Shown here in pieces: positions 2,440 through 64,000 of a DNA stretch of 64,000 nucleotides. The position numbers and the translations under genes were made by a program. Each line of letters begins with the position of its first letter. Position 1 is the first letter of the stretch. The notes under the pieces are model-generated. The model searched no databases, was not told where the DNA came from, and saw only the letters and a list, made by a program, of their open reading frames with translations. Source of the stretch: Mobula hypostoma (lineage: Eukaryota); the NCBI RefSeq assembly GCF_963921235.1, contig NC_086105.1:49848001-49912000 (forward strand), written 5' to 3'.

Positions 2440-3852
2440 GCAACACACACAAAATTGCTGGTGAACGCAGCAGGCCAGGCAGCATCCATAGGAAGAAGCA
2501 CAGTTGATGTTTCAGGCCGAGACCCTTCGTTAGGACTAACTGAAAGAAGAGATAGTAAGAGATTTGAGGGGGGGAGGGGGGGATCAAAAATGATAGGAGA
2601 AGACGGGAGGGGGACGTGATGGAGCTAAGAGCTGGAAAGTTGATTGGCAAAAGGGATACAAGGCTGGAGAAGGGAGGGGATCATGGGACGGGAGGCCTCG
2701 GGAGAAAGAAAGGGGGAGGGGAGCGCCAGAGGAAGACAGAGAGCAGACAAGGAGTAATTGTGAGAGGGAAAGAGAGAGAGAGAGAAAAAAGGGAAATAAA
2801 TAAATAAGGGATGGGGTGAGAACGGGAGGAGGGGCATTAATGGAAGTTAGAGAAGTCAACGTTCATGCCATCAGGTTGGAGGCTACCCAGACGGAATATA
2901 AGATGTTGTTCCTTCAACCTGAGTGTGGCTTCATTTTGACAGTAGAGGAGGCCATGGATAGACATATCAGAATGGGAATGGGATGTGGAATTAAAATGTG
3001 TGGCCACTGGGAGATCCTGCTTTCTCCGGTGGACAGAGCGTAGGTGTTCAGCGAAATGGTCTCAATCCGCGTCGGGTCTCGTCAATATATAGAAGGCCGC
3101 ATCGGGAGCACCGGACGTAGTATATCACACCAGCCGACTCACAGGTGAAGTGTCGCCTCACCTGGAAGGACTGTTTGGGGCCCTGAATGGTGGTAAGGGA
3201 GGAAGTGTAAGGGCATGTGTAGCACTTGTTCCACTTACAAGGATAAGTGCCGGGAGGGAGATCGATTGGAAGGGATGGGGGGAACGAATGGACAAGGGAG
3301 TCGTGTAGGGAGCGATCCCTGCGGAAAGCAGAACGAGAGGGTGAGGGAAAGATGTGTTGGTGGTGGGATCCTGTTGGAGGTGGCGGAAGTTACGGAGAAT
3401 AATATGTTGGACCCGGAGGCTGGTGGGGTGGTAGGTGAGGACAAGGGAAACCCTATCCCTAGTGGGGTGGCAGGAGGATGGGGTGAGAGCAGATGTGTGT
3501 GAAATGGGAGAGGTGCATTTGAGAGCAGAGTTGATGGTGGAGGAAGGGAAGCCTCTTTCTTTAAAAAAGGAAGACATCTCCTATGTCCTGAAATGAAGGG
3601 CCTCATCCTGAGAGCAGATGTGGTGGAGATGGAGGAATCGCAAGAAGGAGATGGAATTTTTGCAGGAGACGGTGAGAAGAGGAATAGTCTAGGTAGCTGT
3701 GAGAGTCTGTAGGCTTATAGTAGACATCAGTAGATAAGCTGTCTCCAGAGATAGAGACAGAAAGATCAAGAAAGGGGAGGGAGTTGTCAGAAATGGACCA
3801 GGTTAATTTGAGGGCAGGGTGAAAGTTGGAGGCAAAGTTAATGAAGTTAATG
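2440..3852 (-). mobile_element. 5'-truncated Penelope-like retroelement (RT C-terminus, GIY-YIG region, pLTR with hammerhead)
   Basis: ORF pieces FINFASNFHPALKLTWSISDNSLPFLDLSV...YYKPTDSHSYLDYSSSH and FFKERGFP...LVLTYHP are Penelope-type. Flanked by the direct repeat AGGTCATA (2432-2439 / 3853-3860) inside a minus-strand Rex1-like 3' end. Confidence 0.88.
2502..2537 (-). ncRNA. Degenerate hammerhead motif in a Penelope pLTR
   Basis: AGUC-CUAACGA-AGGGUCUCGGCCU-GAAAC-AUC-AACU. Confidence 0.6.
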
Positions 3853-4094
3853 AGGTCATAAATCTGCTTACAGCAGTGGTAAATGAAGTTAGCCATCCCA
3901 GTTTAGGAGCCGGATGGTTGTCGGGTAATAAATGCTGCTGACCTTGATGGTGTGACACCTAAGGCTCTGTACCTTCTTCCTAGCAGTAGGAGTGAGAAGG
4001 CGGCTTGGCCTGGCATGTGGGGATATTTAATGTTGGATGTAGTAGAATTCCAATCTGAACAATGACTGTCTTACTAGCAACATGATAGAAGATC

Positions 4095-5021
4095 TACTCT
4101 CTATATACACATGATTGTATGGCTAGGCACAGCTCAAGTACCATCTATAAATTTGCTGACAATACAACCATTGTTGGTAGAATCTCAGGTGGTGACAAGA
4201 GGGCGTACAGGAGTGAGATATGCCAGCTAGTGGAGTGGTGTCGCAGTAACAACCTGGCACTCAATGTCAGTAAGATGAAAGAGCTGATTGTGGACTTCAG
4301 GAAGGGTAAGATGAAGGAACACATATCAATGCTCATAGAGGGATCAGAAGTGGAGAGAGTGAGCAGTTTAAAGTTCCTGGATGTCAAGATCTCTGAGGAT
4401 CTAACCTTGTCCCAACTTATAGATGTTGTTAGAATTTGAAGAGATTTGACATGTCAGCAAATACACTCAAAAACTTCTATAGATGTACCGTGGAGAGCAT
4501 TCTGACAGGTTGCACCACTGTCTGGTATTGGGAGGGGAGGAGACTTCTGCACAGGACCGAAAGAAGCTTCAGAGGGTTATAAATCTAGTCAGCTGTATCT
4601 TGGGTACTAGCCTACATAGTACCCAGGACATCTTCAGGGAGCGGTGTCTCAGAAAGGTAGTGTCCTTTATTAAGGACCTCCAGCACCCAGGGCATGCCTT
4701 TTTCTCACTGTTACCATCAGGTAGGAGGTACAGAAGCCTGAAGGCACACACTCAGTGATTCAGGAACAGCTTCTTCCCCTCTGCCATCCGATTCCTAAAT
4801 GGACATTGAATCCTTGGACACTACTTCACTTTTTTTTAATATACAGTATTTCTGATTTTTGCACATTTTTTAATTTATTCAATAAACGTATACTGTAATT
4901 AATTAATTTATAATTTTTTTTCTCTCTTCTTTATTATATATTGCATTGAACTTCTGCTAAGTTAACAAATTTCATGTCACATGCCGGTGATAATAAACCT
5001 GATTCTGATTCTGATTCTGAT
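4095..5021 (+). mobile_element. Rex1/Babar-like LINE, 5'-truncated, with (CTGATT)n tail
   Basis: RT motif IYKFADNTTIVG, WCRSNNLALNVSK, PSGRRYRS; AATAAA followed by ctgattctgattctgattctga. Confidence 0.85.
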
Positions 5022-5559
5022 CACTAACTGTGATCTGAATTAGTATATTGATCATTGATGCTCAGGTTTGATTTTTCAAGTACCACTCAGCTTCAAACCT
5101 TATCAATTAAGAACTTCTTATTTATAACTTCTTCAGAAGAATATCTAAAGTTCTATGTTGTAAGTGCCTGCCCTTGACATCAGTGCAGCATTTGACCTAG
5201 TTGGAGTCAAGGACCTAGTAAAATTGAAGTCAGTGGAAAATAAGAGAAATCTTTCAACTAGCTAGACCCAGAGGCTATCAAATTATCTCAACTGATATTA
5301 TTATCCTAGAGTTCCTTAATTTATTACACTTGTAAACTTGACTTTTGTTCTCTTTAATGACCATGTTTAGTGACCTGTGAATGCATTGTTCTTGTGGATT
5401 CTATCACCTGGGAATAATGTTTAGTTTGACCAATAGAGATTCTCTGTTGGGCTTGTGATGCCTTAGTGTATGGAGTAAATGATAGAGACGTCATTAACAT
5501 CTGTACAGTTAAGTCAAATATCAGAAAATTGTTGGATAAAAAATAAACAAACGTAAGTA

Positions 5560-6985
5560 CTTTAGAGTTATAGTGCCATTACAGCACAGAAACAAGCCCT
5601 TTGGGCATCTAGTCCAAACAGAACTGTTAATTTGCCTAGTCCCATCAATTTGCATCCAGACCATAGCCCTCATTCAGATGCCTATCCAAATTGCTCTTAA
5701 ATGTTGAAATTGAACAGTCCATTCTCCACTTCTGCTGGCAGCTTGTTCCACACTCTCACCACCCTCTGAGTGAAGCTATTCCCCCTCATGTTTCCCTTAA
5801 ACATTTCACCTTTCACTGTTAACCCTCGTTCTAGTCTCACTCAACCTCAATGGAAAAGGCCTGCTTATATATACTCCTCATAACTTTGTATACCTCTATG
5901 AAAGCTCCACTCATTCTCCAACATTTGAGGATATAAAGTCCTAACCTATTCAACCTTGCCCTATAACTCAGGAACTCAAGTTTAGGGAACATCTTTACAA
6001 AGTTTTTCACCACTCTTATTAATCTTTTTGATATATTTTATATAGGTAGGTGACCAGAACTGCACACAATTACTCCACACAATTACTCCAATTTAGGTCT
6101 CACCAGTGTCTTACACAACTTCAACGTAACATCCCAACTCATTTTCTTTGTTTTATGAAGGCCATTGTTCCAAAAACTCTCCTTATGACCCTATCCACCT
6201 GTGACGCTACTTTCAAGGAATTTGTTCTACCACACACCTCAGTGCCCTACAGCTTACCGTGTAAATTATATTCTGATTTGTCCTCCCAAAGTGCAATACC
6301 ACACACTTGTCTGCATTAAATTCCATACACTTGTCTGCATTAATTTCCATCTGCCATTTTTCAGCTGGTCCAGATCCCGCTGCAAGCTTTCTCGCTATCT
6401 ATGCCTTCAATCTTAATGTCAAATTTATTATATAAATCATTATATAATATTATTATCACACAGTTGATATAGATGACAAACAACAAGAGCCCAGCACACC
6501 ACATCTCACAGGTCTCCAGTCAGAGAGGCAACCATCTACTACCACTGTCTGGCTTCTCCCATGAAGTCAATGTCTAATCCAATTTAGTACCTCATCCTGA
6601 TTGCCAAGTGACTGAACATTCTTGATCAACCTCCCAAGTGGGACCTTGGCAAAAGCTTTGCTAAAGTCCATGTAGACAAGATCCACTGCCTTGTCTTCAT
6701 CAACTTTCCTGGGAAATTACTCGAAAAACCAAAAGACTAGTTTGACACAATCTACTGCGCACAAAACCCAATTGACTGTTCCTAATCAGTCCCTGTCTAT
6801 CCAAATACATATATATTCAGTCCCTTAGAATATCTTCTATTAACTTACCCACTACTGATGTTAGGCTCACAAGCCTATAATTTCCTAGCTTATTCTTACA
6901 GCCTTTTTTAAACAATGGAACAACATTAGCTATCCTCCAATCCTCCAACACCTCATATACTGCTAAGGACTTTTAAATATCTCTG
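5560..6985 (-). mobile_element. CR1-type LINE ORF2 3' part (decayed)
   Basis: Reverse complement similar to 36472-37597. Confidence 0.8.
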
Positions 6986-9900
6986 CTAGGACCCCTGCAA
7001 GTTTACTTTTAAAAAAGAGAGTATTCCAAAATATACTTTCCTGGGCTTTTCTTTCCCTGTATTTCCTATGAATGACTTTTACAAAATCTGATTTACTTTG
7101 TAGTTGAGAGCAGCACTAATATCTGGAGCAAGCACAGAGCCAAACTAATATGTTTAATATCTGGGATATTTACAGTACTCATCCAGAGAGGGATGTAGTA
7201 ATGAGGCACTATTCATATTGGCCAATTTCTGAAACAACTACTCAGTCTGAGTCTTGTGGAATAGAGGGAATCTGATATTAATGGTGGAGAAATTTCTCCC
7301 TCTGCTGCTCAAATTTCTCCATTGCAAGTATCTCACATGGTGCTGTAAAGATGAACAAGTATATCCTTAACTCTTGTTTCTTAAACACCATGCAGTTGAA
7401 AGCCTCTCTTATAACACAGGTTTAGCACAAAAAACACATTTTTGTGCAGCATTCAATATTATTAGCAACACTTCTGTATATAGAAACATTAGGGTTTGGA
7501 GGAAATAGCGTGGGCTAATGATAATCTGCAAACGTTTTTGAACATTACTGAAATGACATCACATCTTTCTGATTAAGATACTGTACAGATCACTTTATTA
7601 AGACATTAACAGGGGACTTTATTGTCTCTGTATGCAGCATCTTGGATGACCAAGAATGAAGCAACAATAATTTTTTGAGCTAGAGAGCTCAAAACAACTT
7701 TTTTCATCTCTTTTCTTTTGCTATAGGTGCTCTAATGGTGGTCCACCTGAGTAAACTTTGCAACCAGTAGTAAGAGGAGAGGCCCAAAAGCATTGGAGTA
7801 CTATTACACACCCTCAGCAGAAGGATAATACAAAATCTTACTCAAAGGCACCTTGTCCAATGAGTGCACAAGGATCCGCAGTGCGACTTTCCCCAAGTCC
7901 AAGGTTTTCTTTTAGTGATGATGGAGCTACCTCTTATTCTGGAAACAGCTCCAGCAACTTATGCCTGTGCTGGTGAGGGAGGTATATTGTTTTGTTGATC
8001 TTTGGATCATTCCAGATGTTGACTGTTGATTGGTGATATATATCATAGACTCAGGCTCATTGTTGCCTTTGTCACTCTTGCTTCTACTGAAGAAGACGGA
8101 ATCACCATGTTGCTGAGCAGTAACTGTTAGCTTTATGGTCTCCTTTCTGAAGGTCCATGGAGTTCTGACTTGCATATGAACTCAGAGCCCTATATGAATT
8201 GTAATAGTTATGCCTTTCTAAATGTATTATCTGTCTTTGACTATGATATGATCACAGACATTGCCCTTTTTCTTTGGGGCTTACAAGACCCCTTCAACTT
8301 CAGTCAATCTTTGGTGCCTCTGAACAGAACAGACTGAAGAACAAAAGATTACATTTGTTGGAAATCCAAAATAAAAACAGGGAATTTTGGAAATACTCTT
8401 TAGGTCTAGCAGGATCTGTTGAAAGAGAAAGAGAATCAATATTTTCAGTCTTTGACCTTACATCAGAACTGATAAAAGTTAGAAATCAAACATTTTTTAA
8501 GTTTCAAAGAAGGTATGTCTGTGTTAGGGTGGAGAGCAAGAGAGACTGGATGTTGATGGTGCTGTCTGAGAGAAGGTGGAAAGACTTACTAATCTCTGCT
8601 GGAGGAGATATAAATGAAATAAAAAGAAAAATAATGTAATCCATAGAATCGGAATTTATACATAGAAGTGTCAAAAATGTTAATATAATGTCTTCTTCCT
8701 CTTCCGCACTGGAGTCTTATTGTTCAGCAGGGATGTGATATGAGAAGGTGCTGGCCTGATGGAGCTAGCCAGCATTTATTAGAGTTTAAAGTAAATTTAT
8801 TATCAAAGTATGTATATCATATACAACACTGAGATTCATTTTCTTGCAGGGACCCACAGGAAAGCAAAGAAGGAGGATGAGAGCTTAAAGTACACATATA
8901 GAAAAGATAAGGGGCAGTTTGTCCAAAGCTGGTCTTTTGTCACTGTCCATAGCAATTTGTTCTATGTTGTCTCAGCACACAAACTTCTGGTAGAGCCCTT
9001 CTCTCAGCCTGGCCAGGAGGTCGCTAATATTCAGGTGCAATCAGGGCGCAGTAAAAAATATTCTTTTTACATTTTAAAATAATACATGAATACAATAAAT
9101 TACTAAAAATATTTAATTTGTAAACAAATTCTACACTGTAATTTATTACAATATAATGTAAAAACCATGAAAACTGGTAGAAATAAACTCTCAGGTAACT
9201 ATTGAGAGGAAATTGGTAAAGATTTGAATGGAAAAGGAGGTAGGCAAAGAAGAGAAATTATCAGATGGCTATAGTTTTGGAAACACCCCTTCTGATTCTA
9301 TCTTTCTGTGGGGGAGAAAAAATCACCAGCTTCAATCATCTTTAAATTAAATATAGCTCAGCAAGATGAAAATAAATGTACTTTCTTTTCTTTCTTAACA
9401 ATATACTGTATATCTCCCTAAATGGAAAAGAATATTCACTACTGCACCAATATGATGTTTTCATCGCATAAATCATGCCAAGGTCCGCTCAGTGGGACTG
9501 GTAAACTTGAAGCAAATTTCATACTGTGATCCATAATTGCATTGAGTTGATTTAATGCTATCCAACTTCGGATTCAGATGGTGTGGTTTCCAATTTTTTT
9601 TTAATGTCCAAGGCACCTACTGAGCATCTGGATGGTTCATTTCCATTACATCATACCTTACACATTTTTTTGCCACAGTAAATGCGGAGCGTGGAATTAT
9701 TTTGAATGTGCTCTTTAGCATGTTATTCAAGAGGAAGGTACAGGAGTGAGGGTTTACATTCCTTAAAAATAGTTGGTATTGTGATTTTCCATAGCTTAAA
9801 GTTATGTAATCAGTGAATGTTGTATAAACACAGGTATGGAGATCCAAGAGGAAACACTGAGGAAGTCTCAGCTCTTATTCTTGTGGTGGTAATATGAGAT

Positions 9901-11505: not shown

Positions 11506-12462
11506 TTTTTCCTTTCTCTGTGGTTGGGATATAGATGTGTAGGATACAAATCTATTGCTGCCTCTCTTTCATTTAACTTTATTTCTGGCCTCAACAACAG
11601 CCAAGGGAACAGTGGCAACCCCTTGGGAGAGTTGATGTGTTAGCCAAATATAAAAAGTTGCAGTTGAATAGAAAGTTGAATTTGAATGGAAAAGATGTGT
11701 GCTCTGTTCAGGGTGATTTTATTATCCATTGGAAAATTCATATCCTCATTTTTGGTGGATTTTTCATTATTCCTTATTCTTTTTTTGAGCTTGAATCTTC
11801 TGCAAAGGATGTTAACAATAGCGCAACAAGTAGAATTTGCTTACTGTGATTTTCAATCTCACTGAAAAGTGCAAGCTCCACTTCGTATAATAATGAACTT
11901 TTACCTACTGCATTTCCTCTGGGTGTGCTATTTAATGGTCAAACACTCAAACTGCATTATTTGTACTGAAATCTAAAAGCTCATACAGCTTTAGACACAA
12001 CCTCACACATGTGCTTTAACTATTGCTGAAGGAGAGCAAGGTTGTAGTCACATTCAGCCTCTCAGCACAGGATCATCAATCTCCACCATCTGAGTCATGC
12101 CATCTGTTCTCAGCCATCATTGGACTGAGGACACGGAAGCCTGAAATCCCTCACTACCAAGTTCAAGAACAGCTATTTCCTTTCAACCATTCAGTTTTTG
12201 ATCCAACCCATACAATCCTAATCACTAGTTTAGCACCACTATGACCACTTTGCAGTAAATGGATTTTTTTTGTTACAAACAAGAGAAAATCTGCAGATGG
12301 ATTTTTCTGTTGTTCTTTCTCAGAAAAATAGTGTATAATTTATGTTGATATTTTTCTTGTGAATGCTGCTTATATGTTGCTATGCGCCTGTGGTGCTGCT
12401 GCAAGTAAGTTTTTCATTGCACCTGTATGTACATGTTCTTCATGTTCGCATATGACAATAAA

Positions 12463-12577
12463 AAAACAAGAGAAAATCTGCGGATACTGGAGTCCTGCTG
12501 AAGGGTCTCAGCATGAAACATCGACTGTACTTTTTTCCATAGATGCTGCCTAGCCTGCTGAGTTTCTCCAGCATTTT
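12463..12577 (+). mobile_element. 115-bp non-autonomous Penelope-pLTR/hammerhead mini-element with 13-bp TSD
   Basis: ATATGACAATAAA at 12450-12462 and 12578-12590; an inverted pLTR terminus is followed by the hammerhead and pLTR. Confidence 0.8.
12491..12526 (+). ncRNA. Hammerhead motif (CUGCUGA variant) in a mini-element
   Basis: AGUC-CUGCUGA-AGGGUCUCAGCAU-GAAAC-AUC-GACU. Confidence 0.65.
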
Positions 12578-15500
12578 ATATGACAATAAACATGACTTTA
12601 ATCTCTGCTAAATCTTTCAATTTGCTTCACGGTTGTATTTAAAAGGTCATTTGAATTAAATATTCAAACAAAGTAAACCTACTTTTCCTTCAGTTCACAA
12701 ATGTTGACAGTGTGTATAAGTATTTGCATCATAGACTGGACGCAAATTTTTTACAGAGATATCTCTGGCCAAGAGTTTTTGGCTGAAGTAAGCGATCTCT
12801 GTAGTAGCCCATGTTGTTTATTGGATTTCAGTCTTGATATCAGGTCTATTATGCTGAATCTCATAAAACATCTGTTGGAAACTGCATTTCCCACATCAAC
12901 CCTGTAATTTATGAAAAAAATCATCAGTTAGATGTGATTTGCCTCTAACATATGTTAACCTATCCACGTGTTCAAATAACTGCTAATTCCCTAATAACCC
13001 TAATTCTGACCCTTATCATTATTTTAGAAATGTTCCCATTAGTATAGCTTGATCTATAGTTATCTGATTTGTTGCTATGCCTTTGTTTTGTTAGAACAAA
13101 GTTGTGGCATTTGCAATTTTCTCAGGCACCACTCTGAACTTATGCAAGTACATCTGCAATTTCAGCAACAAAGAAAACATCACATCTGCACCAGCTTTAC
13201 AAATGTCCAATACAAACTTCAAGTGCTAACAGATCACAACAGCACTATCTGAGTGTGCAATGGCATTACCCTGCAGCAGTTTTTTTTTTGACAATAATAC
13301 GCATCTACTTGCCTCCACTATTTGCTTCCAAAGAATCGCAGACTGGGCTCTACAGCTACCTTATTGAAATAGACCCAAAAATTATGACTTGGGTGAATGT
13401 TTTGGAGATGACGACATCACTCAGAATAGAGTTGTGAGCAAAGTTGGACAGGGTTCGCTAAACACAAATGGAAAATTACTCAGAAGACTGTGAACAATTT
13501 GCCTTTGCAGCTACATGTACTGTTTTCAATGAGCCACTGATCAAAACAATGGCACCAGATCAAGTTTCCTTTTAATGGCTTGAGGGTGTTTACAAAAAAC
13601 AAATTATTCAAGATAAAATATGCACTGTAGATCATTAATGCAGCTAAACTGAACATCAAGATTCACATGACTGGAAGAAAGTTGCCCTAAAATACTTTGA
13701 CTTCTTGAAACAACAATGAGTTGGGGTGGGGGAGGAGAAAGAGGATCAACTTAGTAATTTTTACTAGTAGTGCACTGGCAAACTGCCATTGCAGGAGTAT
13801 GTGGAAGTATCAATGAAGATTGGTGTGCTTTTTGAACCCCAATGCAGTTTAACGGGTAAAGAATACTAATTTAATGAAATTTGAAATGCTTTGATACTTA
13901 TGACAATATTGAAGTACTTCTGGTCCCCCATGGAGTTATGGAACGTCAAAGTGAACAACTGTTTGTCTCCTAGAATTGAGAAAAAGCATTTGCTCTGCTC
14001 TCTCTACACTCATGACTGTGTGGCTGGGCACATCTCAAAAGCCATGTATAAATTCGCCGATGTCTTCAAAGTAAATTTACAGTATATCACCCTGAGATTA
14101 ATTTTCTTGCAGGCATTCAATACAAAATAGACACAAGGAAACAATAGAATTTCAGATACGATCAGGAGATGTATATGTCGGCTGGTTGAGTGGTGTCAAA
14201 ACAACAACCTTGCATTCAGTATCAGTCGGACCAAGAAATTGGTTGTGAACTTTAGGAAGGGAAGTTGAGAGAACACACACTTGACAATCAAGGGGTTAGC
14301 AGCGGAAAAGGTGAGGAGCTTCAAATTGCTAGGTGTCAACATCTCTGAAGTTTGTTGGGCCCAACATTTTATGCAATTATGAAGAAGGCACACCAGCAGC
14401 TATATTTCATTAGGAGTTTGTGGTGCTGATCCAGAAGTTGATCATGACCTGTTAGGGAGGTGTAACTGCTTGGGGCCTGGAGGTCGAAAGGGGTCATAAA
14501 TTCAATGCTGGTTGTAAATAGATGAGGGTAAAAGATGGTCGGGACCATTCGGTGATTAGTAAGTGGCAAATTAGCTAAACTTTGTAATCTTGCAGTGTGC
14601 AGATGGAGATCCCATTGGATTTGGGGTGGGGGAGATATTAAGTAATTACATTAAAGAGACTATGCTGGGGGAAGTCTCCAAAATAGTAGTGTTATTAAGG
14701 TTTTGTTATTCTGTTGAAGTTCAATGACAGCTGCACTCCAGAACAATGTGATATCATTTCTACATCTGGCTGACATGGAATTCTCTAATCACTATGAATA
14801 CTATTAATGTTATAGAGTAATGCAGCACTTTTATCACAACATAAAATGCCCAGAAAAACTTACAAAAGTTCTGATCAATGATGGATGACCTGAAAGGTTA
14901 AGTGTTTTTCTTTCTACAAATTGCTACCAAATCTGTTAAATCTTTCTAGCATATTTCCATATGGAACTAGTCACAACACAATCTGTTTCAAAATTAAATG
15001 TTGTTCATTAGTGTAGCTTTATAAAAATCCATGTGACTGAATTTCACATGTACCTTGTCAATTCTTTGTTATTTTCTCACTGTGGAAGCTTATTAATATC
15101 TTCCTATATATTGTTCCACTTCTATTTTATTATACACCTAAATTTGGTTTATCCACAAATTTTGAAATTGCATTTGCATTCCTAGGTCCAAATCCATTGA
15201 ATAACTGAAGATCAGCTCTATTTCCAGCACCAATTTTTGTGGAATACCACTTTGTATCTCTTGTTAATCTGAGTTATCTCCTACTCTCTACCTACTGCCT
15301 TGTACCCAACATTCAACTATCTGAGTCACAACTCTCCATTTTCTGACACTTGTGTGTCTATTATGCCATATCTTATCAAAGACTTTCTCATGGAAATCCG
15401 TCATCATAAACAAATTAATTCACCTTTCTGCCTCTTCCTCATTTCCTAATCTGGTGAATCTTTACCAGTCAGCCAAGAATAATATCTTCACAAGTGATTT

Positions 15501-34219: not shown

Positions 34220-37200
34220 AGGTTGGCTGACCTGTAACACCAGAGGTCCCAACGCACTAGACCACTGTTATACTAAGATAAGGAATGCCTACCGTTCCAT
34301 ACTCAGACCTTATTTCAGGAAATCTGATCACTTGGCTGTCCTTCTCCTACCTGCATCCAGGCAGAGGCTAAAGAATAAGGCTCTAGAGTTTAGGACAACA
34401 AAGAGGTGATCACAGGAGGCAGTAGAGTGGATATGGAATTGCTTTGAGTCAGTGGACTGGGCCGTGTTCCAGAACTCATCTGTGGATCTGAATGAATTAG
34501 TTGTCACAGACTTTATAAAAACAGTAGTAGATCAGCGTGTCCTCACAAAACCATTCAGTCTTCCCCAAACAGGAGCCCTGGATGAACCATGAAATCCTCA
34601 ATCTTTTGAGGGCCAGATCAGAGGCATTCATGGCTGGTGACCAATTAAGTTACAAGATGTCCAGGTACTATCTCTGGAAAACTATCTCATGGATGAAGTG
34701 ACCATTCTGGACTAAAACTGAATCAATGAAGAATGCTTGACATTTGTGGCAAGGCTTGAATGCTATCCCTCTTATAAAGTAAAATCAAGCGATATAGGCA
34801 ACAACAGGACTTCACATCCAGAAGAGCTCAATACCTTCTATGTTCTCTTTGACCATCAAAACATGGAGGAACCATCACAAATTTCCACAGCCCATGATGA
34901 TCCTGTGATTTCAGTCTGAGGCTGACGTGCAAGCATCCTTCAGAAGGGTGAACCCATGGAAAGCATCTATCCAGTTGGGGAGTTGGGTACCTGACCAAGT
35001 ACTGAAGACCTGCACTAATCAACTGGCTGAAGTGTTCACTGAGACCTTTAACCCCTCACTTTGGCAGTCTGAACTACCAACCTGTTTCAAGCAGGCTTCA
35101 ATTATGCTGAAGAAGAGCTTGGTAACCTGCCTCAATGATTATCATGCACAGTGATGAAGTGTTTTGAGAAGTTAGTGATGAAACATAGCAATTACTGACT
35201 GAGAAGAAACTTGGATCTGCTCAAATTTGCCTATTGGCACAACAGGTTCACAGCAGGTGCTATCTCATTGGCTCTTCACTCAACCCTGGAATATCTGGAC
35301 AGTAAAGATGCATACATCAGAATGCTGTTTATCGACTACAGCTTGGCATTCAGTGCCATCATCCCCTCAATACTAATCAATAAGCTTCAAGACCTTGGCC
35401 TCAATACCTCCCTGTGCAACTAGATCCAATTTCCTAACTTGTGGACTCCAGTCAGTTTGGATTGGCAACAACATTTCCTCCACAATCTCTATCAGCACAG
35501 GTGTGCTTAGCTCCTGGTCTACTCACTTTACCCTTATGATGATGTGGCTAAGCATAGCTCCGTTGCTATATTCAAGTTTGCTGATGACACCACTGTCGTA
35601 GGCCAAATCAAAGGTGGTGATGAATCAGCATATAGGAGGGAGATTGAAAATCAGGCTGACTGGTGCCAGAACAACCACCTCTTACTCAATGTCAGCATGA
35701 CCAAGGAGCTGATTATTGACTTCAGGAGAAGGAAACCAGCGGTCCATGAGTCATTACTCATCACAGGATCAGAGTTGGAGAGGCTAAGCAGCTTTAATTT
35801 TTCATTGTTATCATTTGATGACCTGTCCTGGGTCCAGCGCATAAGTGCAATTACAAAGAAAGCACAAAGGCACCTCTGCTTGCTTAGGAGCTTGCAAACA
35901 TTCGGCATGACATCTAAAACTTCGAAAAATTTCTTTAGATGCATAGTGGTGGAAGGTATATTGGCTGGCCACATCACAGTCTGGTATGAAAACACCAATG
36001 CCCTTGAACAGAAAATCCTACAAAAAGTAGTGGATATGGCCCAGTCCATCTTGGGTAAAGCCCTCCCCACCATTGAGCACATCTACACAAAACGTCACAG
36101 GAAAGCAGCAGCTATTGTCAGGCACCCCAGCACACAGGACCTGCTCTTTTTTCGCTGCTGCCATCAGGAAGAAGGTACAGGAGCCTCAAGACTCAGACCA
36201 CAAGGTTCAGGAAAAATCATAAACACAAAATAATCTACAGATGCTGGGGTCAAAGCAACACTCACAACACGCTGGAGGAACTCAGCAGGTCAGGCAGCAT
36301 CCGTGGAAAAGGTCAGTCGATGTTTCGGGCCAACCTGCTGAGTTCCTCCAGCATGTTGTGAGTGTTGCTTCAGGAACAATTATTACCCCTCACCCATCAA
36401 GCCCTTGAAACATAAGGGATAACTTCACTCACCCCATCACTTGCTCCATCCCACAACCCATAGACTTACTCTTGATTCCACACGGTAGGCTTATTCAGAA
36501 AGTTAGAAGGCATGGGATCCAGGGAAGTTTGGCCAGGTGGATTCAGAATTGGCTTGCCTGCAGAAGGCAGAGGGTGGTGGTGGAGGGAGTACATTCAGAT
36601 TGGAGGATTGTGACTAGTGGTGTCCCACAAGGATCTGATCTGGGACCTCGACTTTTCGTGATTTTTATTAACGACCTAGATGTGGGGGTAGAAGGGTGGG
36701 TTGGCAAGTTTGCAGACGACACAAAGGTTGGTGCTGTTTTAGATAGTGTAGAGGATTGTCAAAGATTGTGGAGAGACATTGATAGGATGCAGAAGTGGGC
36801 TGAGAAGTGGCAGATGGAGTTCAACCAGGAGAAATACACTTTGGAAGGACAAACTCCAAGGCAGAGTACAAAGTAAGTGGCAGGATACTTGGTAGTGTGG
36901 AGGAGCAGAGGGATCTCGGGGTACATGTCCACAGATCCCTGAAAGTTGCCTCACAGGTGGATAGGGTAGTTAAGAAAGCTTATGGGGTGTTAGCTTTCAT
37001 AAGTCGAGGGATAGAGTTTAAGAGCCGCGATGTAATGATGCAGCTCTATAAAACTCTGACTCTGGTTAGGCCACACTTGGAGTATTGTGTCCAGTTCTGG
37101 TCACCTCACTATAGGAAGGATGTGGAAGCATTGGAAAGGGAACAGAGGAGATTTACCAGGATGCTGCCTGGTTTAGAAAGTATGCATTATGATCAGAGAT

Positions 37201-37830
37201 TAAGGGAGCTAGGGCTTTGCTCTTTGGAGAGGAGGAGGATGAGAGGAGACATGATAGAGGTGTACAAGATAATAAGAGGAATAGCCGAGTGGATAGCCAG
37301 CGCCTCTTCCTCAGGGCACCACTGCTCAGTACAAGAGGACATGGCTTTTAAGGTAAGGGGTGGGAAGTTCAAGGGGGATATTAGAGGAAGGTTTTTTACT
37401 CAGAGAGTGGTTGGTGCATGGAATGCACTGCCTGAGTCAGTGGTGGTGGCAGATACACTAGTGAAGTTTAAGAGACTACTAGACAGGTATATGGAGGAAT
37501 CTAAGGTGGGGGCTTATATGGGAGGCAGGCTTTGAGGGTCGGCACAACATTGTGGGCCAAAGGGCCTGTACTGTGCTGTACTATTCTATGTTCTATGTTG
37601 ATATTTATTGTTTGTTTATTTATTTATTATTATTTCATTCTTTTTGTATTTGCACATTTTGTTGGGTTTTTTTTGTCCATTGGTTGAACACCTAGTTGGT
37701 ACTGTCTTCTATTATAGTTATTATTTTATTATGGATTTATTAAGAATGCCCTCAAGAAAATGAATCTCAGGATTGTATATGGTGACATCTATGCACTTTG
37801 AGAATAAATTTACTTTGAACTTTGATCTTT
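34220..37830 (+). mobile_element. Rex1/Babar-like LINE ORF2 and 3' UTR, interrupted by a pLTR fold-back and a CR1
   Basis: TRGPNALDHCY...[24 protein letters not shown]; AATAAA plus tttgaactttga tail. Confidence 0.88.
36472..37597 (+). mobile_element. Relatively young 5'-truncated CR1 LINE
   Basis: Long ORF pieces [41 protein letters not shown]; (TTCTATG)n tail. Confidence 0.92.
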
Positions 37831-46794: not shown

Positions 46795-47259
46795 TTAAAG
46801 ATAGGGATACTGGTTCACCTTGGTTGGGCTCAGTGGGTATCCTGTGTAGACAGCTGAGGCTGGCGAAGCATTGATGTATGTCTGATGGGCAAACTGGGGT
46901 TGGTACTGACTTGGATGGATGGTTGGAGAAGGCAGTACTCTTGGCCCCATGCCAACGGGCACTTGGTGAACTATTCCCCCAGGATGGGTAGCATAGGCGT
47001 GCCTGGCAGAGCCCTGCGATGTCACAAGGTGAGCCACCGTGCCTGTGGGGCCTAGGGCAGCAGGTGTGGCATAGGTATACAGATGAGGCTGACCCGGTAG
47101 ATGAGCTGCAGCCAAGTGAGGATGCACAGTTGTGTGTGAAGGACTACGATGTGGGAATGAATAAGGAGCCTGTGCAATAGTCGGTGTGATGTAAGCCTGT
47201 TGTCTTCGATGTCCATGGTTTCCACTCCGCTCCGGTATGCTTGTCGCATGTTGCTGAGC
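46795..47259 (-). CDS. HIPK2: HIPK2 terminal coding exon (155 codons including stop), Tyr/His-rich C-terminus
   Basis: [37 protein letters not shown]...[67 protein letters not shown] points to HIPK2 rather than HIPK1/3. Acceptor gctctAG at 47260-47261. Confidence 0.96.
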
Positions 47260-53709: not shown

Positions 53710-54535
53710 CCTCAGCAGGTCAGACAGCATCTATGCAGAGGAATAAACAGTCGAAGTTTTGGGCTGAGACCCTTCATCAGGACTGGACAGGAAGGGGGAA
53801 GGTGCCACAATAAAGTGTTGTGGGAAGGAGAAGGAGTACAAGCTGACAGGTTATAGGTGAGGGGGAATGTGGGTGTGTGGGAGTGGGGAAGGAAGGATGA
53901 ATTTAAGAAGCTTAGGAAGTGATAGGTGGAAAAGATAAAGGGCTGAAGAAGGGATCTGTTAGGAGAGGACAGTGGGTCATAGGAAGAAGGGAAGGAGGGA
54001 GGGGCCACCAAAGGGATGTGATGGGCAGATTGGAAGAAGAGAAGGGGAGCCAGAATGGGGAATGGAAAAAGATAGTATGGGGAAGAGTGAGAAATCACTA
54101 GTAGTTAGAGAAATCGATGTTCATACTATCAGTTTAGAGGCTACCCGGACAGAAAATGAGGTTGCTTTTCCAATATAAGTGTAGCCTCATCAGGGCAGTA
54201 GAGAAGGCCATGGACTGACATGTCAAAATGGGAAGTTGAATTGAAATGAGAAATCCCACATTTGAGGTGGACTGAGTGAAGGTGCTTGATGAAGCAGTTC
54301 TCAAATCTATATTGTGAGCACTGGATACAGTTGATGACCCCAGTAGACTCTCAGGTCACTTGGAAGGACTATTTGGGGCCTAGAATGGTGGTGAAGGAGG
54401 TGTTGCACTTGTCTCACTTGCAGGGATAAGAGCCAGGAGGGAGATCAGTGGGAAAGGATGAATGGACAAGGGAGTCACATAGAGAGCAATTTCTGTGGAA
54501 AGCAGAGAATGATGAGGATGGAAAGATGTGCCTTA
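53710..54535 (-). mobile_element. Penelope-like 3' fragment with pLTR
   Basis: Similar to 2460-3350. Confidence 0.8.
53749..53784 (-). ncRNA. Hammerhead motif with GAAA mutated to AAAA (probably inactive)
   Basis: AGUC-CUGAUGA-AGGGUCUCAGCCC-AAAAC-UUC-GACU at a Penelope end. Confidence 0.65.
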
Positions 54536-54745
54536 GGTGATGCAAAGGGACCTTGACGTCCTAGTGCAGGATTCTCTAAAGATTAACTTGCAAGTTGTAG
54601 TAGTAAGGAAGGCAAATACAAAGTTAACATTCATTTTGAGAGGACTAGAATAGAAAAGCAAGGAAGAAAAGCTGAGGCTTTAGAAGGCATTGGTCATTAC
54701 GAGTATTGTGAGCAGTTTTGAATCTCATATCTAAGGATGGATGTA

Positions 54746-54862
54746 AAAACGCAAACACGAGGAAATTCCTGACAAAGAGTCTCGGCCCGAAACGTCGACT
54801 GTACCTCTTCCTAGAGATGCTGCCTGGCCTGCTGCGTTCACCAGCAACTTTTATGTGTGTTG
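54746..54862 (+). mobile_element. 117-bp non-autonomous Penelope-pLTR/hammerhead mini-element with perfect 15-bp TSD
   Basis: CTAAGGATGGATGTA at 54731-54745 and 54863-54877. Confidence 0.88.
54765..54800 (+). ncRNA. Hammerhead motif (core CUGACAA, mutated) in a mini-element
   Basis: AUUC-CUGACAA-AGAGUCUCGGCCC-GAAAC-GUC-GACU. Confidence 0.65.
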
Positions 54863-55327
54863 CTAAGGATGGATGTATTGGCTTTGGAGAAGGTCCATAA
54901 GTGGTTTACAAGAATGATCCTGGGAATGAAAACTTTAATATATAAGGTGCATTTGATGGCCTTGGATCTGTACTCACTAAGGTTTAGAAGAATGAGAGGG
55001 CATCTCATTGAACTGGACAGAATAACATTCAGCAGGACTGAATGGGCCGAAGGACCTGTTTCTGTGCTGTAGTGCTCTATGACTGTGAAACCTACAAATA
55101 TTGAAAGGCCTGGATTAATTGGACATGGAGAGGATGCTTTCAATAGTGGGAGAATCTGGGACCAGAGGGCACAGCCTCAGGGTAGAAGGAATGCTGACCC
55201 CCTTCCCCTTTAGAATGGAGATGAGGAGGGACTTCTTTAGCCAGTTGGTGGTGAGTCTGTGGAATTCATTTACACAAATAGCTCTGGACAGCAAGTCATT
55301 GTGTATGTTTAACGAGGAGGTTGCTAC

Positions 55328-61290: not shown

Positions 61291-61815
61291 CGGAAAATGC
61301 ATCAGACATAAAACACTATAGCATTATTACAGGTCTTTCTGCCCATGGTGTTGTGGCAAAGTTTATCCTACTCAAAGATCAATCTAACCCTTCCCTTCTA
61401 CATTGCCCTCAATTTTTCATGTGCCTATCCTAGTTTCTTAAATGTCCCTAACCTATCTGCCTCTACCACCACCCTTGGCAAGGCATTCCAAGCACCCACC
61501 ACTCTTTGTATATAAAAAAATACCACTGGCACCCCCGCCCCCATAATTTCCTCCAGTCACCTTAAAATTATGCCCCCTCATATTGGCCATTTCTGCCATA
61601 ATCAGTGTACCCAGTAAAGAATTTAAAAGAAAACTCTTCATTTCAGGTTGGAATGGATTTACCGTCACATACATGGATGCACAACATGTAGATGAAGAAT
61701 TAAACAAAGGACCATATTAACGTGGTAACATAAAATAATACCAGATGAAGCTACTGTTAGGTATAATCAAGACCCTGCTACTCTGGTATAAATTCTAATA
61801 CCCTTATTCCATCAC

Positions 61816-62094
61816 CTGTTGGGTACACGTTTGCGTTCTTCTTCATCATCCGTATCACTGCTGATGGTTATGACGCTGACCGCTGGGCTGGGTGTGTCTG
61901 GAATGACAATGGTCTGCCTCTGATTCTCCTGGGTTGTGCTGGTGGCCTCTCCCCAGCCACATGTCAAGGTGTTACAGGCCGGACTGTCCTGCACTACAGC
62001 ACAGCGAGGAGGAGTGTTCTCCTTGACGCGTTTTGAGCGCTGCGGTGAGTGTGAGCTGAAGCTACGGGAGGAGGACACTTCGTATGAAGTATTT
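61816..62094 (-). CDS. HIPK2: HIPK2 internal coding exon (279 nt) encoding the KRVK NLS region and the SUMO-interacting motif
   Basis: Translates (R)[31 protein letters not shown]...[34 protein letters not shown], closely matching vertebrate HIPK2 as I recall it. Acceptor ccacAG at 62095-62096, donor AG|GTGATG. Phase 2 joins the next exon in frame. Confidence 0.95.
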
Positions 62095-63141
62095 CTGTGG
62101 GGATAAATATAGAAATGTTATACACAAAAAATAATATCCTATGCAGTGGGTCAAATTAAACATAAGGCACAGAAAATTATTTAACCATGTTTAATATGGG
62201 ATTGATTTCCTTTACTTTGAAATGTGGCCACCAATGTAAAACTTATTTCGATATCTTTATATGAATAATTTGACTTGTGTCAACTAAAAGTACATATTGG
62301 AGAATTCCATTCTGCCTCAAATCACCTCAATAAATTCAAAGACAAGGGAGCTGTTACTAATAATTCTGATTTTTCTTCCTTTCAAATTATAAGATTTTAA
62401 TTTAATTTCCAATGGATATGATATACAACTAGTTTTCCAAATGAATTTAGCACTGGAAGATTTGAAAGAACCGGGATGTAAAAGTATACATGGAAAAGCA
62501 AATTAAAAGTCAATGCAGGGAGTTGTGTTGAGGCTTTATTGAGAAATGATGTGCTGGATATGTTTGCGGGAAATGGGTGACACTGGATCGATGATTCCCA
62601 AACCTCTCTACTTCTGGGATTTCTCTTATATCTTATCTGGGTCTTATTGCTACCATTAGAAAACAAATCCATTATCATTATATTCTGCTTTTACCAGGCT
62701 GGTGGTAGGAAAACTTGTAGGTTGTTAATTTTGTTTGTCAAATAGTTGCTGTGTTTCTAATGTACTGAATAGATTGAGTGCCTTTTGCATAGTTTTGTTC
62801 GCTCAGCTCAAAATGTACTGTATTACTTGTAGTTTAGAAGAATAAGAGGTGCCCTGATTCAAACATCAAGGACCCAGCAGGGCTTGACAGGGTAGATATT
62901 GAAGTGTCTTCACTAGCGGGAGAGTAACACAACAGAACTTTACAGCACAGGAACAGGCTCTTTGGCCCATGAATCTAACTGTTCCTATCTGCATTCACAT
63001 AGTTCATATCCCTCTGTTCCATGTCTGGTCATGTGTCTGTCCAAATGGCTTCTGGACATTTCTTTTGTATCTGTTTTTATCACCTCACCTGGCAACACGA
63101 TCCAGGTACCTAACATTTTATCTTAAAACAAACTTGCATCA

Positions 63142-63765
63142 TACATCAAAGTTGCTGGTGAACGCAGCAGGCCAAGCAGCATCTATAGGAAGAGGCGCAG
63201 TCGACGTTTCAGGCCGAGACCCTTCGTCAGGACCAACTGAAGGAAGAGTGAGTAAGGGATTTGAAAGCTGGAGGGGGAGGGGGAGATGCAAAATGATAGG
63301 AGAAGACAGGAGGGGGAGGGATAGAGCCGAGAGCTGGACAGGTGATAGGCAAAAGGGGATACGAGAGGATCATGGGACAGGAGGCCTAGGGAGAAAGACG
63401 GGGGGGGGGTGACCCAGAGGATGGGCAAGAGGTATATTCAGAGGGAGAAAAAGGAGAGTGAGAGAAAGAATGTGTGCATAAAAAGGAGTAACAGCTGGGG
63501 TACGAGGGGGAGGTGGGGCCTAGCGGAAGTTAGAGAAGTCAATGTTCATGCCATCAGGTTGGAGGCTACCCAGACGGAATATAAGGTGTTGTTCCTCCAA
63601 CCTGACTGTGGCTTCATCTCTACAGTAGAGGAGGCCGTGGATAGACATGTCAGAATGGGAATGGGATGTGGAATTAAAATGTGTGGCCACTGGGAGATCC
63701 TGCTTTCTCTGGCGGACAGAGCGTAGATGTTCAGCAAAGCGGTCTCCCAGTCTGCGTCGGGTCTC
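63142..63765 (-). mobile_element. Penelope-like 3' fragment (624 bp) with 10-bp TSD, inserted in a minus-strand CR1 3' end
   Basis: ACTTGCATCA at 63132-63141 and 63766-63775; very similar to 2450-3080. Confidence 0.88.
63199..63234 (-). ncRNA. Minimal type I hammerhead ribozyme motif with intact core (Penelope pLTR)
   Basis: Minus strand reads GGUC-CUGACGA-AGGGUCUCGGCCU-GAAAC-GUC-GACU: CUGANGA, GAAA and the GUC cleavage triplet are all present, stem I is GGUC/GACU, stem II is short, and a palindromic ACGU replaces stem III. Confidence 0.8.
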
Positions 63766-64000
63766 ACTTGCATCACGCAGCTTTTTTAAACATTCCCACT
63801 CTCATCTTAAACCTATGCTCTATAGTATTTGACAATGCCCCCCTGGGGAAAAAAGATGCTGAATATCTATGCCTCTCAATTTTCTATCAGGTTATCTCTC
63901 AGCGAAAACAAACCAAGTTTGTCCAACCCTCCTTACAGCTAATACACTCCAACCCTTTCTGCACTGTCTCCGAAGCCTCCACATCCTTCTTGCAGCATAT

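What the first reader, a model, noticed from the sequence alone, without database searches (positions are those of the whole stretch)
63199..63234. Core-intact minimal hammerhead ribozyme in sense orientation inside a HIPK2 intron
Seen: the minus strand reads GGUC CUGACGA AGGGUCUCGGCCU GAAAC GUC GACU, with every canonical core nucleotide present. It lies ~1.1 kb upstream of the HIPK2 SIM exon on the transcribed strand, in a well-preserved TSD-flanked Penelope fragment. Established: Penelope-like elements carry minimal type I hammerheads that lack a stable stem III and cleave as dimers through a palindrome (here ACGU). Inference: HIPK2 pre-mRNA carries a potentially self-cleaving RNA. It could pair with the second sense copy at 53749 or, in trans, with other pLTR transcripts, and so affect HIPK2 processing. 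The stem II register is ambiguous because of the extra A after CUGANGA.
Basis: partly seen in the sequence, partly recalled or inferred. Interest (0 to 1): 0.8.

Follow-up and report, generated by a model that had tools for sequence, protein, structure and literature searches.

The report
Ordinary Penelope hammerhead copy in intron
The hammerhead-ribozyme motif in this ray HIPK-family intron is real, but it is one of more than 100,000 copies left by a Penelope-like jumping gene, and nothing suggests it cuts the host gene's RNA.

Summary
Window 63198-63235 (minus strand) carries a complete minimal type I hammerhead (min-HHR): a CUGACGA box, a bulged A, a 4-bp stem II, GAAA, the ACGU palindrome, a GUC cleavage site and a 5-bp stem I. 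It lies 56 nt from the 3' end of a 624-bp, 5'-truncated Penelope-like element (PLE; 63142-63765). That element is flanked by a 10-bp target-site duplication. It is in sense orientation, about 1.1 kb upstream of a spliced HIPK-family exon.

The copy is not special.
- The genome holds 54,913 core-intact copies of the motif and 116,607 copies within 3 mismatches.
- It holds 962 copies identical to this one over 36 nt.
- A related organism has the empty site, so the insertion is recent and not conserved.

The extra A is the known bulge between positions 9 and 10.1 of PLE hammerheads.

The functional inference is not supported.
- The proposed partner at 53749 is core-dead and has lost the palindrome.
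- No second intact copy lies within the 72 kb examined.
- The predicted ground state is an inactive rod hairpin.
- Published PLE min-HHRs cleave poorly even as dimers, or need PLE protein.

This scan has already flagged the same motif in introns of at least eight other genes of this genome. My verdict is a new member of a known kind, most likely a neutral passenger.

The parts
63198..63235 (-). Minimal type I hammerhead (min-HHR): stem I UGGUC/GACUG, CUGACGA, bulged A, stem II GGGU-CUCG-GCCU, GAAA, ACGU palindrome, GUC. The predicted cleavage is between 63203 and 63202.
   Evidence: The same 36-mer occurs 962 times in the genome. It differs at one position (63234) from the commonest 36-mer.
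63142..63197 (-). 56-nt PLE 3' tail downstream of the hammerhead. It ends at the target-site duplication.
   Evidence: The tail is shared with sister copies in L001-L030. Its 3' end is defined by the TSD and the empty site.
63236..63519 (-). C/T-rich 3' untranslated stretch between the PLE stop codon and the hammerhead.
   Evidence: Other subfamilies lack it, shown by contig joints from 63233 to 63532-63540 (table 5).
63520..63765 (-). Remnant of the PLE ORF: the last 81 codons plus the stop, open throughout. It starts inside the GIY-YIG endonuclease domain (ETRRRLGDRFAEHL...). This is the point of 5' truncation.
   Evidence: Translation. The sister copy L011, 96.5% identical, carries a 291-aa open frame with GIY-YIG PF01541 (E=1.9e-4, 22.1 bits against a cut-off of 22.6). 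Atlas clusters of GIY-YIG/HTH_animal/reverse transcriptase score 0.96-0.97.
63132..63141 (.). Target-site duplication TGATGCAAGT, on the 3' side of the element.
   Evidence: The empty-site contig has a single copy.
63766..63775 (.). Target-site duplication TGATGCAAGT, on the 5' side of the element.
61816..62094 (-). HIPK-family exon encoding the SIM-like [15 protein letters not shown] stretch. It is the next exon downstream of the hammerhead on the transcript.
   Evidence: ORF. Spliced contigs of X1 (0 differences) and X5 appear, where the alignment overhangs to 62097.
53750..53780 (-). It is a decayed hammerhead (AAAAC, UUC; palindrome lost) in the next intron.
46795..47127 (-). Last coding stretch and stop codon of the HIPK-family gene (...[14 protein letters not shown]). 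It fixes the gene's strand and its 3' end.

Best explanation
The motif is the minimal hammerhead carried near the 3' end of a Penelope-like retrotransposon. A 5'-truncated 624-bp copy was inserted by target-primed reverse transcription into an old LINE fragment. That fragment lies inside an intron of a ray HIPK-family gene, and the insertion made a 10-bp target-site duplication. The insertion happened after the split from a related organism that still has the empty site.

The core is intact because the copy is young, not because the host selects it. All four CpGs of the motif survive, and the nearest sister copies are 96.5% identical.

In the element's own life cycle the hammerhead is thought to process PLE transcripts as a dimer or with help from the PLE protein (inferred from the literature). 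In the HIPK pre-mRNA it is most likely a silent passenger. As a lone monomer it folds into a rod hairpin that sequesters the core, and it has no competent partner nearby. Any residual slow cleavage inside an intron would be tolerated by co-transcriptional splicing.
For: -
- The family holds 54,913 intact 31-nt motifs, with 0 in the reversed control. It holds 116,607 copies within 3 mismatches, split 58,281 and 58,326 between the strands. There are 962 copies of this exact 36-mer.
- The TSD and the exact empty site (63131 joined to 63766) are seen in run X21, whose flanks are 2.6% diverged.
- Sister copies are up to 96.5% identical.
- A GIY-YIG domain is found in a sister ORF.
- All other copies in the window and in L031 carry core-killing changes.
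- The monomer MFE structure pairs core GACG with CGUC (-10.8 kcal/mol). The double-hammerhead conformer scores -10.3, against -21.6 for two monomers and -29.9 for the extended duplex.
- Spliced mRNA contigs cross this intron in the same species.
- Literature: min-HHRs lack helix III, carry the 9/10.1 bulge, show no monomer activity and low dimer activity (PMC4209133). The Anolis PLE hammerhead cleaves only with PLE protein, is dispensable for insertion in vitro and leaves no RNA-seq ends at its site (PMC11167929). Slow hammerhead cleavage within an intron does not prevent splicing (PMC2995048).
Against: - Cleavage itself could not be tested. All available runs are stored as contigs, which cannot show RNA ends.
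- The family is young and may still be active, so PLE protein and abundant PLE-tail transcripts could exist as trans partners. Summed contig depth over the motif is about 4x10^5 in the RNA-like run X1, against 222 for the exon.
- The upstream copy at 64016-64046 keeps the ACGU palindrome and a cleavable GUU.
- Nearest-neighbour energies ignore hammerhead tertiary contacts.
Confidence: 0.85

Rival explanations
1. The motif is catalytically active in vivo on the HIPK pre-mRNA. It dimerises through ACGU and stem I with another PLE-tail RNA, or it is folded by PLE protein. It then cleaves the intron and lowers or modulates HIPK mRNA output. The partner could be the upstream copy at 64016-64046 or transcripts of other copies.
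For: - All core nucleotides are present, along with the palindrome, a 5-bp stem I and a 4-bp stem II.
- The upstream copy 816 nt away keeps the palindrome and stem I.
- Family sequences are very abundant in the RNA-like runs.
- PLE protein can activate a PLE hammerhead in vitro (PMC11167929).
Against: - The upstream partner has G12A. In a double hammerhead its crippled core would face this copy's GUC, so only the partner's GUU could be cut.
- The 10.1-11.1 pair is G.U instead of the conserved G-C.
- The active conformer is about 11-20 kcal/mol less stable than the alternatives.
- In vitro activity of min-HHR dimers is low (PMC4209133).
- No RNA-seq ends were seen at the Anolis PLE hammerhead site (PMC11167929).
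- Spliced mRNA across the intron is readily assembled.
- About 55,000 intact copies are tolerated genome-wide.
Confidence: 0.07
2. The conserved 36-nt module acts mainly as a rod-like hairpin rather than as a ribozyme. The hairpin comprises stem I, GACG/CGUC and stem II. It could serve as a recognition or template-switch structure for the PLE reverse transcriptase, in which case the hammerhead boxes would be only partly relevant.
For: - The MFE of the monomer is this hairpin.
- Both N7 variants, C and U, keep the GACG/GAUG-CGUC pairing.
- Many head-to-head junctions fall in or next to the motif.
- The most prolific subfamily has a weakened G.U at 10.1-11.1: 83 of the first 100 intact copies.
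- Hammerhead cleavage is dispensable for insertion in vitro (PMC11167929).
Against: The same CUGANGA/GAAA/UH boxes, the 9/10.1 bulge and the palindromic 15.2-16.2 pair recur in PLEs from very distant eukaryotes. Some of those PLEs have canonical, active hammerheads (PMC4209133). Core mutants C3G and G8C abolish cleavage and the double mutant restores it in the Anolis element (PMC11167929).
Confidence: 0.06
3. The motif has been exapted by the host as a regulatory ribozyme of the HIPK gene, comparable to the conserved intronic hammerheads or the CPEB3 ribozyme of amniotes.
For: Only the sense orientation and the intact core.
Against: - The insertion is absent from the orthologous site of a related organism.
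- There are 962 identical copies and more than 10^5 similar copies elsewhere.
- Intactness is explained by the copy's youth.
Confidence: 0.01

Closest known systems
Minimal hammerheads (min-HHR) of metazoan Penelope-like elements (Cervera & de la Pena 2014, PMC4209133; Lunse et al. 2017, cited in PMC6765202)
   Same: Type I topology with no helix III or loop 3 (GAAA-CG-UC). It has an unpaired nucleotide between A9 and 10.1, a palindromic 15.2-16.2 pair and a short helix I. It sits in the terminal repeat or 3' end of a GIY-YIG PLE. Copies are dispersed in large numbers, mostly solo or in opposite-strand pairs.
   Different: - The 10.1-11.1 pair is G.U in this copy and in about 83% of intact family members, instead of the highly conserved G-C.
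- Helix II has only 4 bp with two wobbles, against 6-8 bp in the Schistosoma and Drosophila examples.
- N7 is C.
- The copy number (about 55,000 intact) is well above the 4,000-9,000 reported for coelacanth and Xenopus.
- Activity was not tested.
Poseidon PLE of Anolis carolinensis (PAc) hammerhead (PMC11167929)
   Same: A vertebrate PLE hammerhead next to a 3' 'tail' from which reverse transcription starts, so insertions end a short distance downstream of the ribozyme.
   Different: In PAc the hammerhead overlaps the start of the ORF. Here it follows the ORF and a roughly 280-nt C/T-rich untranslated stretch. Protein-assisted cleavage was shown for PAc and was not tested here.
Double-hammerhead self-cleavage of newt satellite 2 and ASBVd RNAs (Forster et al. 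1988, cited in PMC4209133 and PMC6765202)
   Same: An unstable helix III means an active site can form only between two copies.
   Different: Those RNAs are tandem multimers, so a partner is always in cis. This copy is solo in its intron.
Conserved intronic ribozymes of amniotes: HH9/HH10 hammerheads (Rfam RF02275, RF02277; named from my own knowledge) and the CPEB3 HDV-like ribozyme (PMC10919898)
   Same: A self-cleaving-type motif in sense orientation inside an intron of a protein-coding gene.
   Different: Those are single-copy, conserved across species and fold as stable monomers. This one is a recent, unconserved copy of a repeat, gets no Rfam hit and is dimer-dependent.
Non-LTR retrozymes of animals (PMC7229834; bioRxiv 10.64898/2026.07.22.740005)
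   Same: Type I hammerheads related to PLE terminal repeats. Short non-autonomous derivatives exist in this window (54731-54877 and 12450-12590).
   Different: Retrozymes are tandem repeats with a hammerhead in each unit and give circular RNAs. The element here is a solo 5'-truncated autonomous-type copy.

Membership tests
PLE minimal hammerhead (min-HHR, Cervera & de la Pena 2014) | Catalytic boxes CUGANGA and GAAA, and a UH cleavage site, in type I order | tested here: met
   CUGACGA, GAAA and GUC at 63230-63203(-).
PLE minimal hammerhead (min-HHR, Cervera & de la Pena 2014) | No helix III or loop 3; 15.2-16.2 palindromic, so that two copies can form a shared helix III | tested here: met
   GAAA-CG-UC. 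ACGU is self-complementary. The double-hammerhead pairing scheme is nested and can be drawn.
PLE minimal hammerhead (min-HHR, Cervera & de la Pena 2014) | [quoted passage not shown] | tested here: met
   A at 63223 precedes the GGGU/GCCU stem. The feature is described in PMC4209133.
PLE minimal hammerhead (min-HHR, Cervera & de la Pena 2014) | Highly conserved G10.1-C11.1 pair | tested here: not met
   This copy has G.U (GCCU). So do 83 of the first 100 intact family copies; 17 have C. G10.1 itself is kept.
PLE minimal hammerhead (min-HHR, Cervera & de la Pena 2014) | Helices I and II supported by pairing | tested here: met
   Stem I has 5 bp (U.G, G.U, G-C, U-A, C-G). Stem II has 4 bp (G.U, G-C, G-C, U.G) with a CUCG loop. 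Covariation between subfamilies is too sparse in my sample to count.
PLE minimal hammerhead (min-HHR, Cervera & de la Pena 2014) | Self-cleavage as a dimer | not testable with these tools
   Only contig-level runs were available. Energetics disfavour the active conformer.
Rfam hammerhead families (Hammerhead_1, _3, _II, HH9, HH10) | Score at or above the curated covariance-model threshold | tested here: not met
   No hit at gathering score over the whole window. No hit at E<=10 over 62600-63800. This is expected, because these models require a helix III hairpin.
Penelope-like element (PLE) | C-terminal GIY-YIG endonuclease domain following a reverse transcriptase | tested here: met
   The window fragment keeps only the last 81 codons, which give no Pfam hit. 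The sister copy L011 (96.5% identical) has GIY-YIG PF01541 at E=1.9e-4, 22.1 bits, just under the 22.6 cut-off. Atlas clusters GIY-YIG/HTH_animal/reverse transcriptase score 0.96-0.97. An RT motif ...RYIDDC... is seen in the L029 and L023 frames. Support is moderate rather than strong.
Penelope-like element (PLE) | Hammerhead-bearing terminal region and 3' tail; 5'-truncated copies with TSDs; frequent head-to-head inverted partners | tested here: met
   10-bp TSD and empty site. Inverted pairs 40-90 bp apart are seen in the genome list and loci.
Host-exapted intronic ribozyme | Orthologous presence and sequence constraint across species | tested here: not met
   A contig of run X21 (organism J) joins 63131 to 63766 with a single TSD copy.

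The most novel reading that the evidence does not exclude
When this young PLE family is expressed, its protein and abundant tail transcripts could switch on otherwise latent sense-oriented min-HHRs in thousands of host introns. The HIPK intron would be one of them. There, the intact core at 63198-63235 could pair through ACGU with the G12A copy 816 nt upstream and cut at that copy's GUU (window-equivalent 64019|64018). That would couple transposon activity to host pre-mRNA cleavage.
Probability: 0.04. Interest if true: 0.7.

Novelty: new member of a known kind. Interest (0 to 1): 0.15.

Why it matters
For the HIPK gene it probably does not matter. The motif is a recent, unconserved passenger copy.

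The family as a whole is of some interest. This 3.5-Gb ray genome carries about 55,000 core-intact minimal hammerheads, roughly one per 63 kb, so thousands of host pre-mRNAs must contain one in sense orientation. That makes the genome a natural test bed for two questions. One is whether dimer- or protein-dependent PLE hammerheads ever cleave in vivo. The other is whether selection removes sense intronic copies. Both could be answered with end-mapping data and a gene annotation, and neither was available here.

Tried and rejected
- Rfam covariance models gave nothing at gathering score or at E<=10. This is uninformative for min-HHRs, which lack helix III.
- I looked for RNA 5'/3' ends at the cleavage site. 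All 23 runs found are stored as Logan contigs. Read laying reported no places where molecules begin or end, and contigs cannot show them.
- I tried to fetch the remaining upstream 200 kb of the gene to look for intact cis partners.
- Pfam gave no hits on the 81-aa ORF remnant or on two ORFs of the older copy at 3161-3896. A longer sister frame was needed. PDB sequence search gave nothing.
- An Atlas search with the C-terminal 110 aa of the host gene was uninformative, with a best score of 0.82. The HIPK2-versus-HIPK1/3 assignment therefore rests on reading the SIM-like and C-terminal peptides, not on a tool.
- The Lunse et al. 2017 paper (PMC5785218) is not held. I used its summary in PMC6765202 instead.
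- I rejected pairing with the copy at 53749. It has G12A, UUC and a lost palindrome, and it lies in another intron.
- I rejected host exaptation because of the empty site.
- I did not compare hammerhead-versus-flank conservation in L001-L030. Those loci were selected for an intact motif, so the test would be circular.

Full report
**Observation**

A descriptor of CTGANGA, a 6-30 nt gap and GAAACGTC matches once in the window, at 63203-63230(-), and never in 100 shuffles. My stricter min-HHR descriptor requires stem I of at least 4 bp, stem II of at least 3 bp, a palindromic helix III and a UH site. It finds this site alone in the window plus the next 8 kb, and nothing in 20 shuffles.

The anatomy is as follows.
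- Stem I is UGGUC/GACUG (63235-63231 with 63202-63198).
- The CUGACGA box is followed by one unpaired A.
- Stem II is GGGU/GCCU closed by a CUCG loop.
- Then come GAAA, C15.2-G16.2 and U16.1-C17.
- Predicted cleavage falls between 63203 and 63202.

**Host gene**

ORFs on the minus strand encode ...[27 protein letters not shown]... (61812-62078) and a C-terminus ...[14 protein letters not shown] (46795-47127). From my own knowledge I recognise these as the SUMO-interaction region and the C-terminus of a HIPK-family kinase. The paralogue was not verified with a tool, because the Atlas search was uninformative.

A 1,544-nt contig of run X1 has 0 differences from the window, and a 10,280-nt contig of run X5 also matches. 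Both match only at 61816-62097. They are therefore spliced transcripts, and the exon is expressed. The splice sites put the exon at 61816-62094, with an AG acceptor and a GT donor. The hammerhead is thus in sense orientation, about 1.1 kb upstream of that exon, as claimed.

**The element**

Reading outward on the minus strand, the insertion spans 63142-63765 (624 bp).
- It begins inside a GIY-YIG-type endonuclease ORF (ETRRRLGDRFAEHL...). That frame stays open for 81 codons up to its stop.
- About 280 nt of C/T-rich untranslated sequence follows.
- Then come the hammerhead and a 56-nt tail.
- The element is flanked by TGATGCAAGT at 63132-63141 and 63766-63775.

A 511-nt contig of run X21 (organism J) aligns to 62943-63131 and then, without a gap in the contig, to 63766-63995. 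It shows 11 differences in 419 nt (table 8). That is an exact empty site with one TSD copy. The insertion is therefore real, recent and not shared with that relative.

The sister copy L011 is 96.5% identical. Its 291-aa open frame hits GIY-YIG PF01541 at E=1.9e-4, just under the curated cut-off. The frame also resembles Atlas clusters annotated GIY-YIG, HTH_animal and reverse transcriptase at 0.96-0.97. Other sister frames show an RT-like ...RYIDDC... motif. Taken with the hammerhead-plus-tail terminus and the frequent head-to-head partners, this supports a Penelope-like element.

**Family size**

- The 31-nt intact motif, allowing Y/R at three CpG-decay positions, occurs 27,460 + 27,453 times. 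The reversed control gives none.
- The commonest 36-mer occurs 58,281 + 58,326 times within 3 mismatches.
- The exact 36-mer of this window occurs 962 times.
- The window copy differs from the commonest form at one stem I position (A to G at 63234), which still pairs as G.U.

The motif contains four CpGs, and all four are intact here. The decayed copies in the window show mostly CpG-type transitions. Intactness therefore reflects youth. This scan has also flagged sense intronic copies of the motif in at least eight other genes of this genome. Those notes are unchecked, but they agree with the counts.

**Is it likely to cleave the pre-mRNA?**

Several points argue that it is not.

1. There is no competent partner nearby.
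G12 is lost, the palindrome is now ACUU, and the copy lies in the next intron.
   - The other copies in the window have CUAACGA, CUGCUGA or CUGACAA boxes, or lie antisense.
   - The nearest upstream copy is at window-equivalent 64016-64046, 816 nt away. It keeps ACGU and a GUU site but has G12A.
   - In a double hammerhead each core acts on the other molecule's site. The crippled core would therefore face this copy's GUC. Only the partner's GUU could be cut by the intact core.
2. Thermodynamics disfavour the active conformer. The monomer's minimum-energy fold is a rod hairpin in which core GACG pairs with CGUC (-10.8 kcal/mol). The double-hammerhead conformer evaluates at -10.3, against -21.6 for two monomers and -29.9 for an extended duplex. 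For the pairing with the upstream copy the figures are -12.5 and -28.1. These energies ignore tertiary contacts.
3. The 10.1-11.1 pair is G.U rather than the conserved G-C, both here and in 83 of the first 100 intact copies.
4. The published record points the same way.
   - Min-HHR monomers show no activity, and dimers show low activity mostly at non-physiological Mg2+ (PMC4209133).
   - The Anolis PLE hammerhead cleaves only with PLE protein. It is dispensable for insertion in vitro and leaves no RNA-seq ends at its site (PMC11167929).
   - A slow hammerhead placed in an intron does not prevent splicing (PMC2995048).
5. Spliced mRNA across this intron is readily assembled in the same species.

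**What could not be done**

- Cleavage ends could not be examined, because every run is held as contigs.
- The upstream part of the gene beyond window-equivalent 72 kb could not be fetched.
- Orientation bias relative to genes needs an annotation that I do not have.

**Comparison and verdict**

The motif meets the defining features of the PLE min-HHR except for the G10.1-C11.1 pair. It fails the Rfam hammerhead models, as expected for a motif without helix III. It is not an exapted host ribozyme, given the empty site and the hundreds of identical copies.

I file it as a new member of a known kind. It is a solo, young, 5'-truncated PLE copy whose hammerhead is most likely silent in the host transcript (confidence 0.85). 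The active reading keeps about 0.07. The residual novel possibility is that PLE protein or abundant tail transcripts conditionally activate sense intronic copies genome-wide. That possibility is testable by end mapping and an orientation census.

Noticed in passing
window 54731-54877 (+): A roughly 117-bp mini-element made only of a decayed hammerhead (CUGACAA box) plus the PLE tail. It is flanked by a perfect 15-bp TSD, CTAAGGATGGATGTA. It lies antisense to the HIPK gene.
   Followed up: partly
window 12450-12590 (+): A second mini-element (hammerhead with a CUGCUGA box, plus tail) from a different tail subfamily. It is flanked by a 13-bp TSD, ATATGACAATAAA.
   Followed up: partly
L031 2016-2110 (window-equivalent 64016-64110), minus strand: A decayed hammerhead (G12A, GUU) preceded directly by an inverted copy of the PLE tail. 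A transcript through it would form a long hairpin extending stem I. It lies 816 nt upstream of the studied copy, in the same intron and orientation.
   Followed up: partly
G000 contig C1, e.g. 109232/109303, 1088316/1088404, 2546805/2546844, 4659451/4659500; loci L001, L003, L017, L021: Many intact copies sit as head-to-head inverted pairs 40-90 bp apart. In L001 and L017 the inversion junction lies inside the hammerhead itself.
   Followed up: no
window 2450-3900 (-): An older, larger 3' portion of the same PLE family. It is about 81% identical over the shared 630 bp, and its ORF pieces resemble the RT C-terminal region and the GIY-YIG region. Its hammerhead is dead (CUAACGA, GAAACAUCAAC). 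It lies downstream of the HIPK stop codon.
   Followed up: partly
window 63233 to 63532-63540 (contig joints in runs X1 and X5): Other subfamilies join the ORF end almost directly to the hammerhead. They lack the roughly 300-nt C/T-rich stretch present in this copy. Similarity among contigs breaks most often at 63198 and 63233, which are the edges of the 36-nt hammerhead module.
   Followed up: no
window 63198-63235 (-): The core GACG (G5-G8, with N7 = C) is complementary to CGUC (15.2-17). The whole module can therefore fold as a rod hairpin that hides the catalytic core. The CUGAUGA variant keeps this pairing through a U.G pair.
   Followed up: partly
window 35544-37535 (+) and 63776-64010 (-): Fragments of LINE-type retroelements, with ORFs holding ...FADDTK... 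and ...RGGKFKGD.RG.FFTQRVV..WN.LP... motifs. The PLE copy studied here inserted into one such fragment.
   Followed up: no
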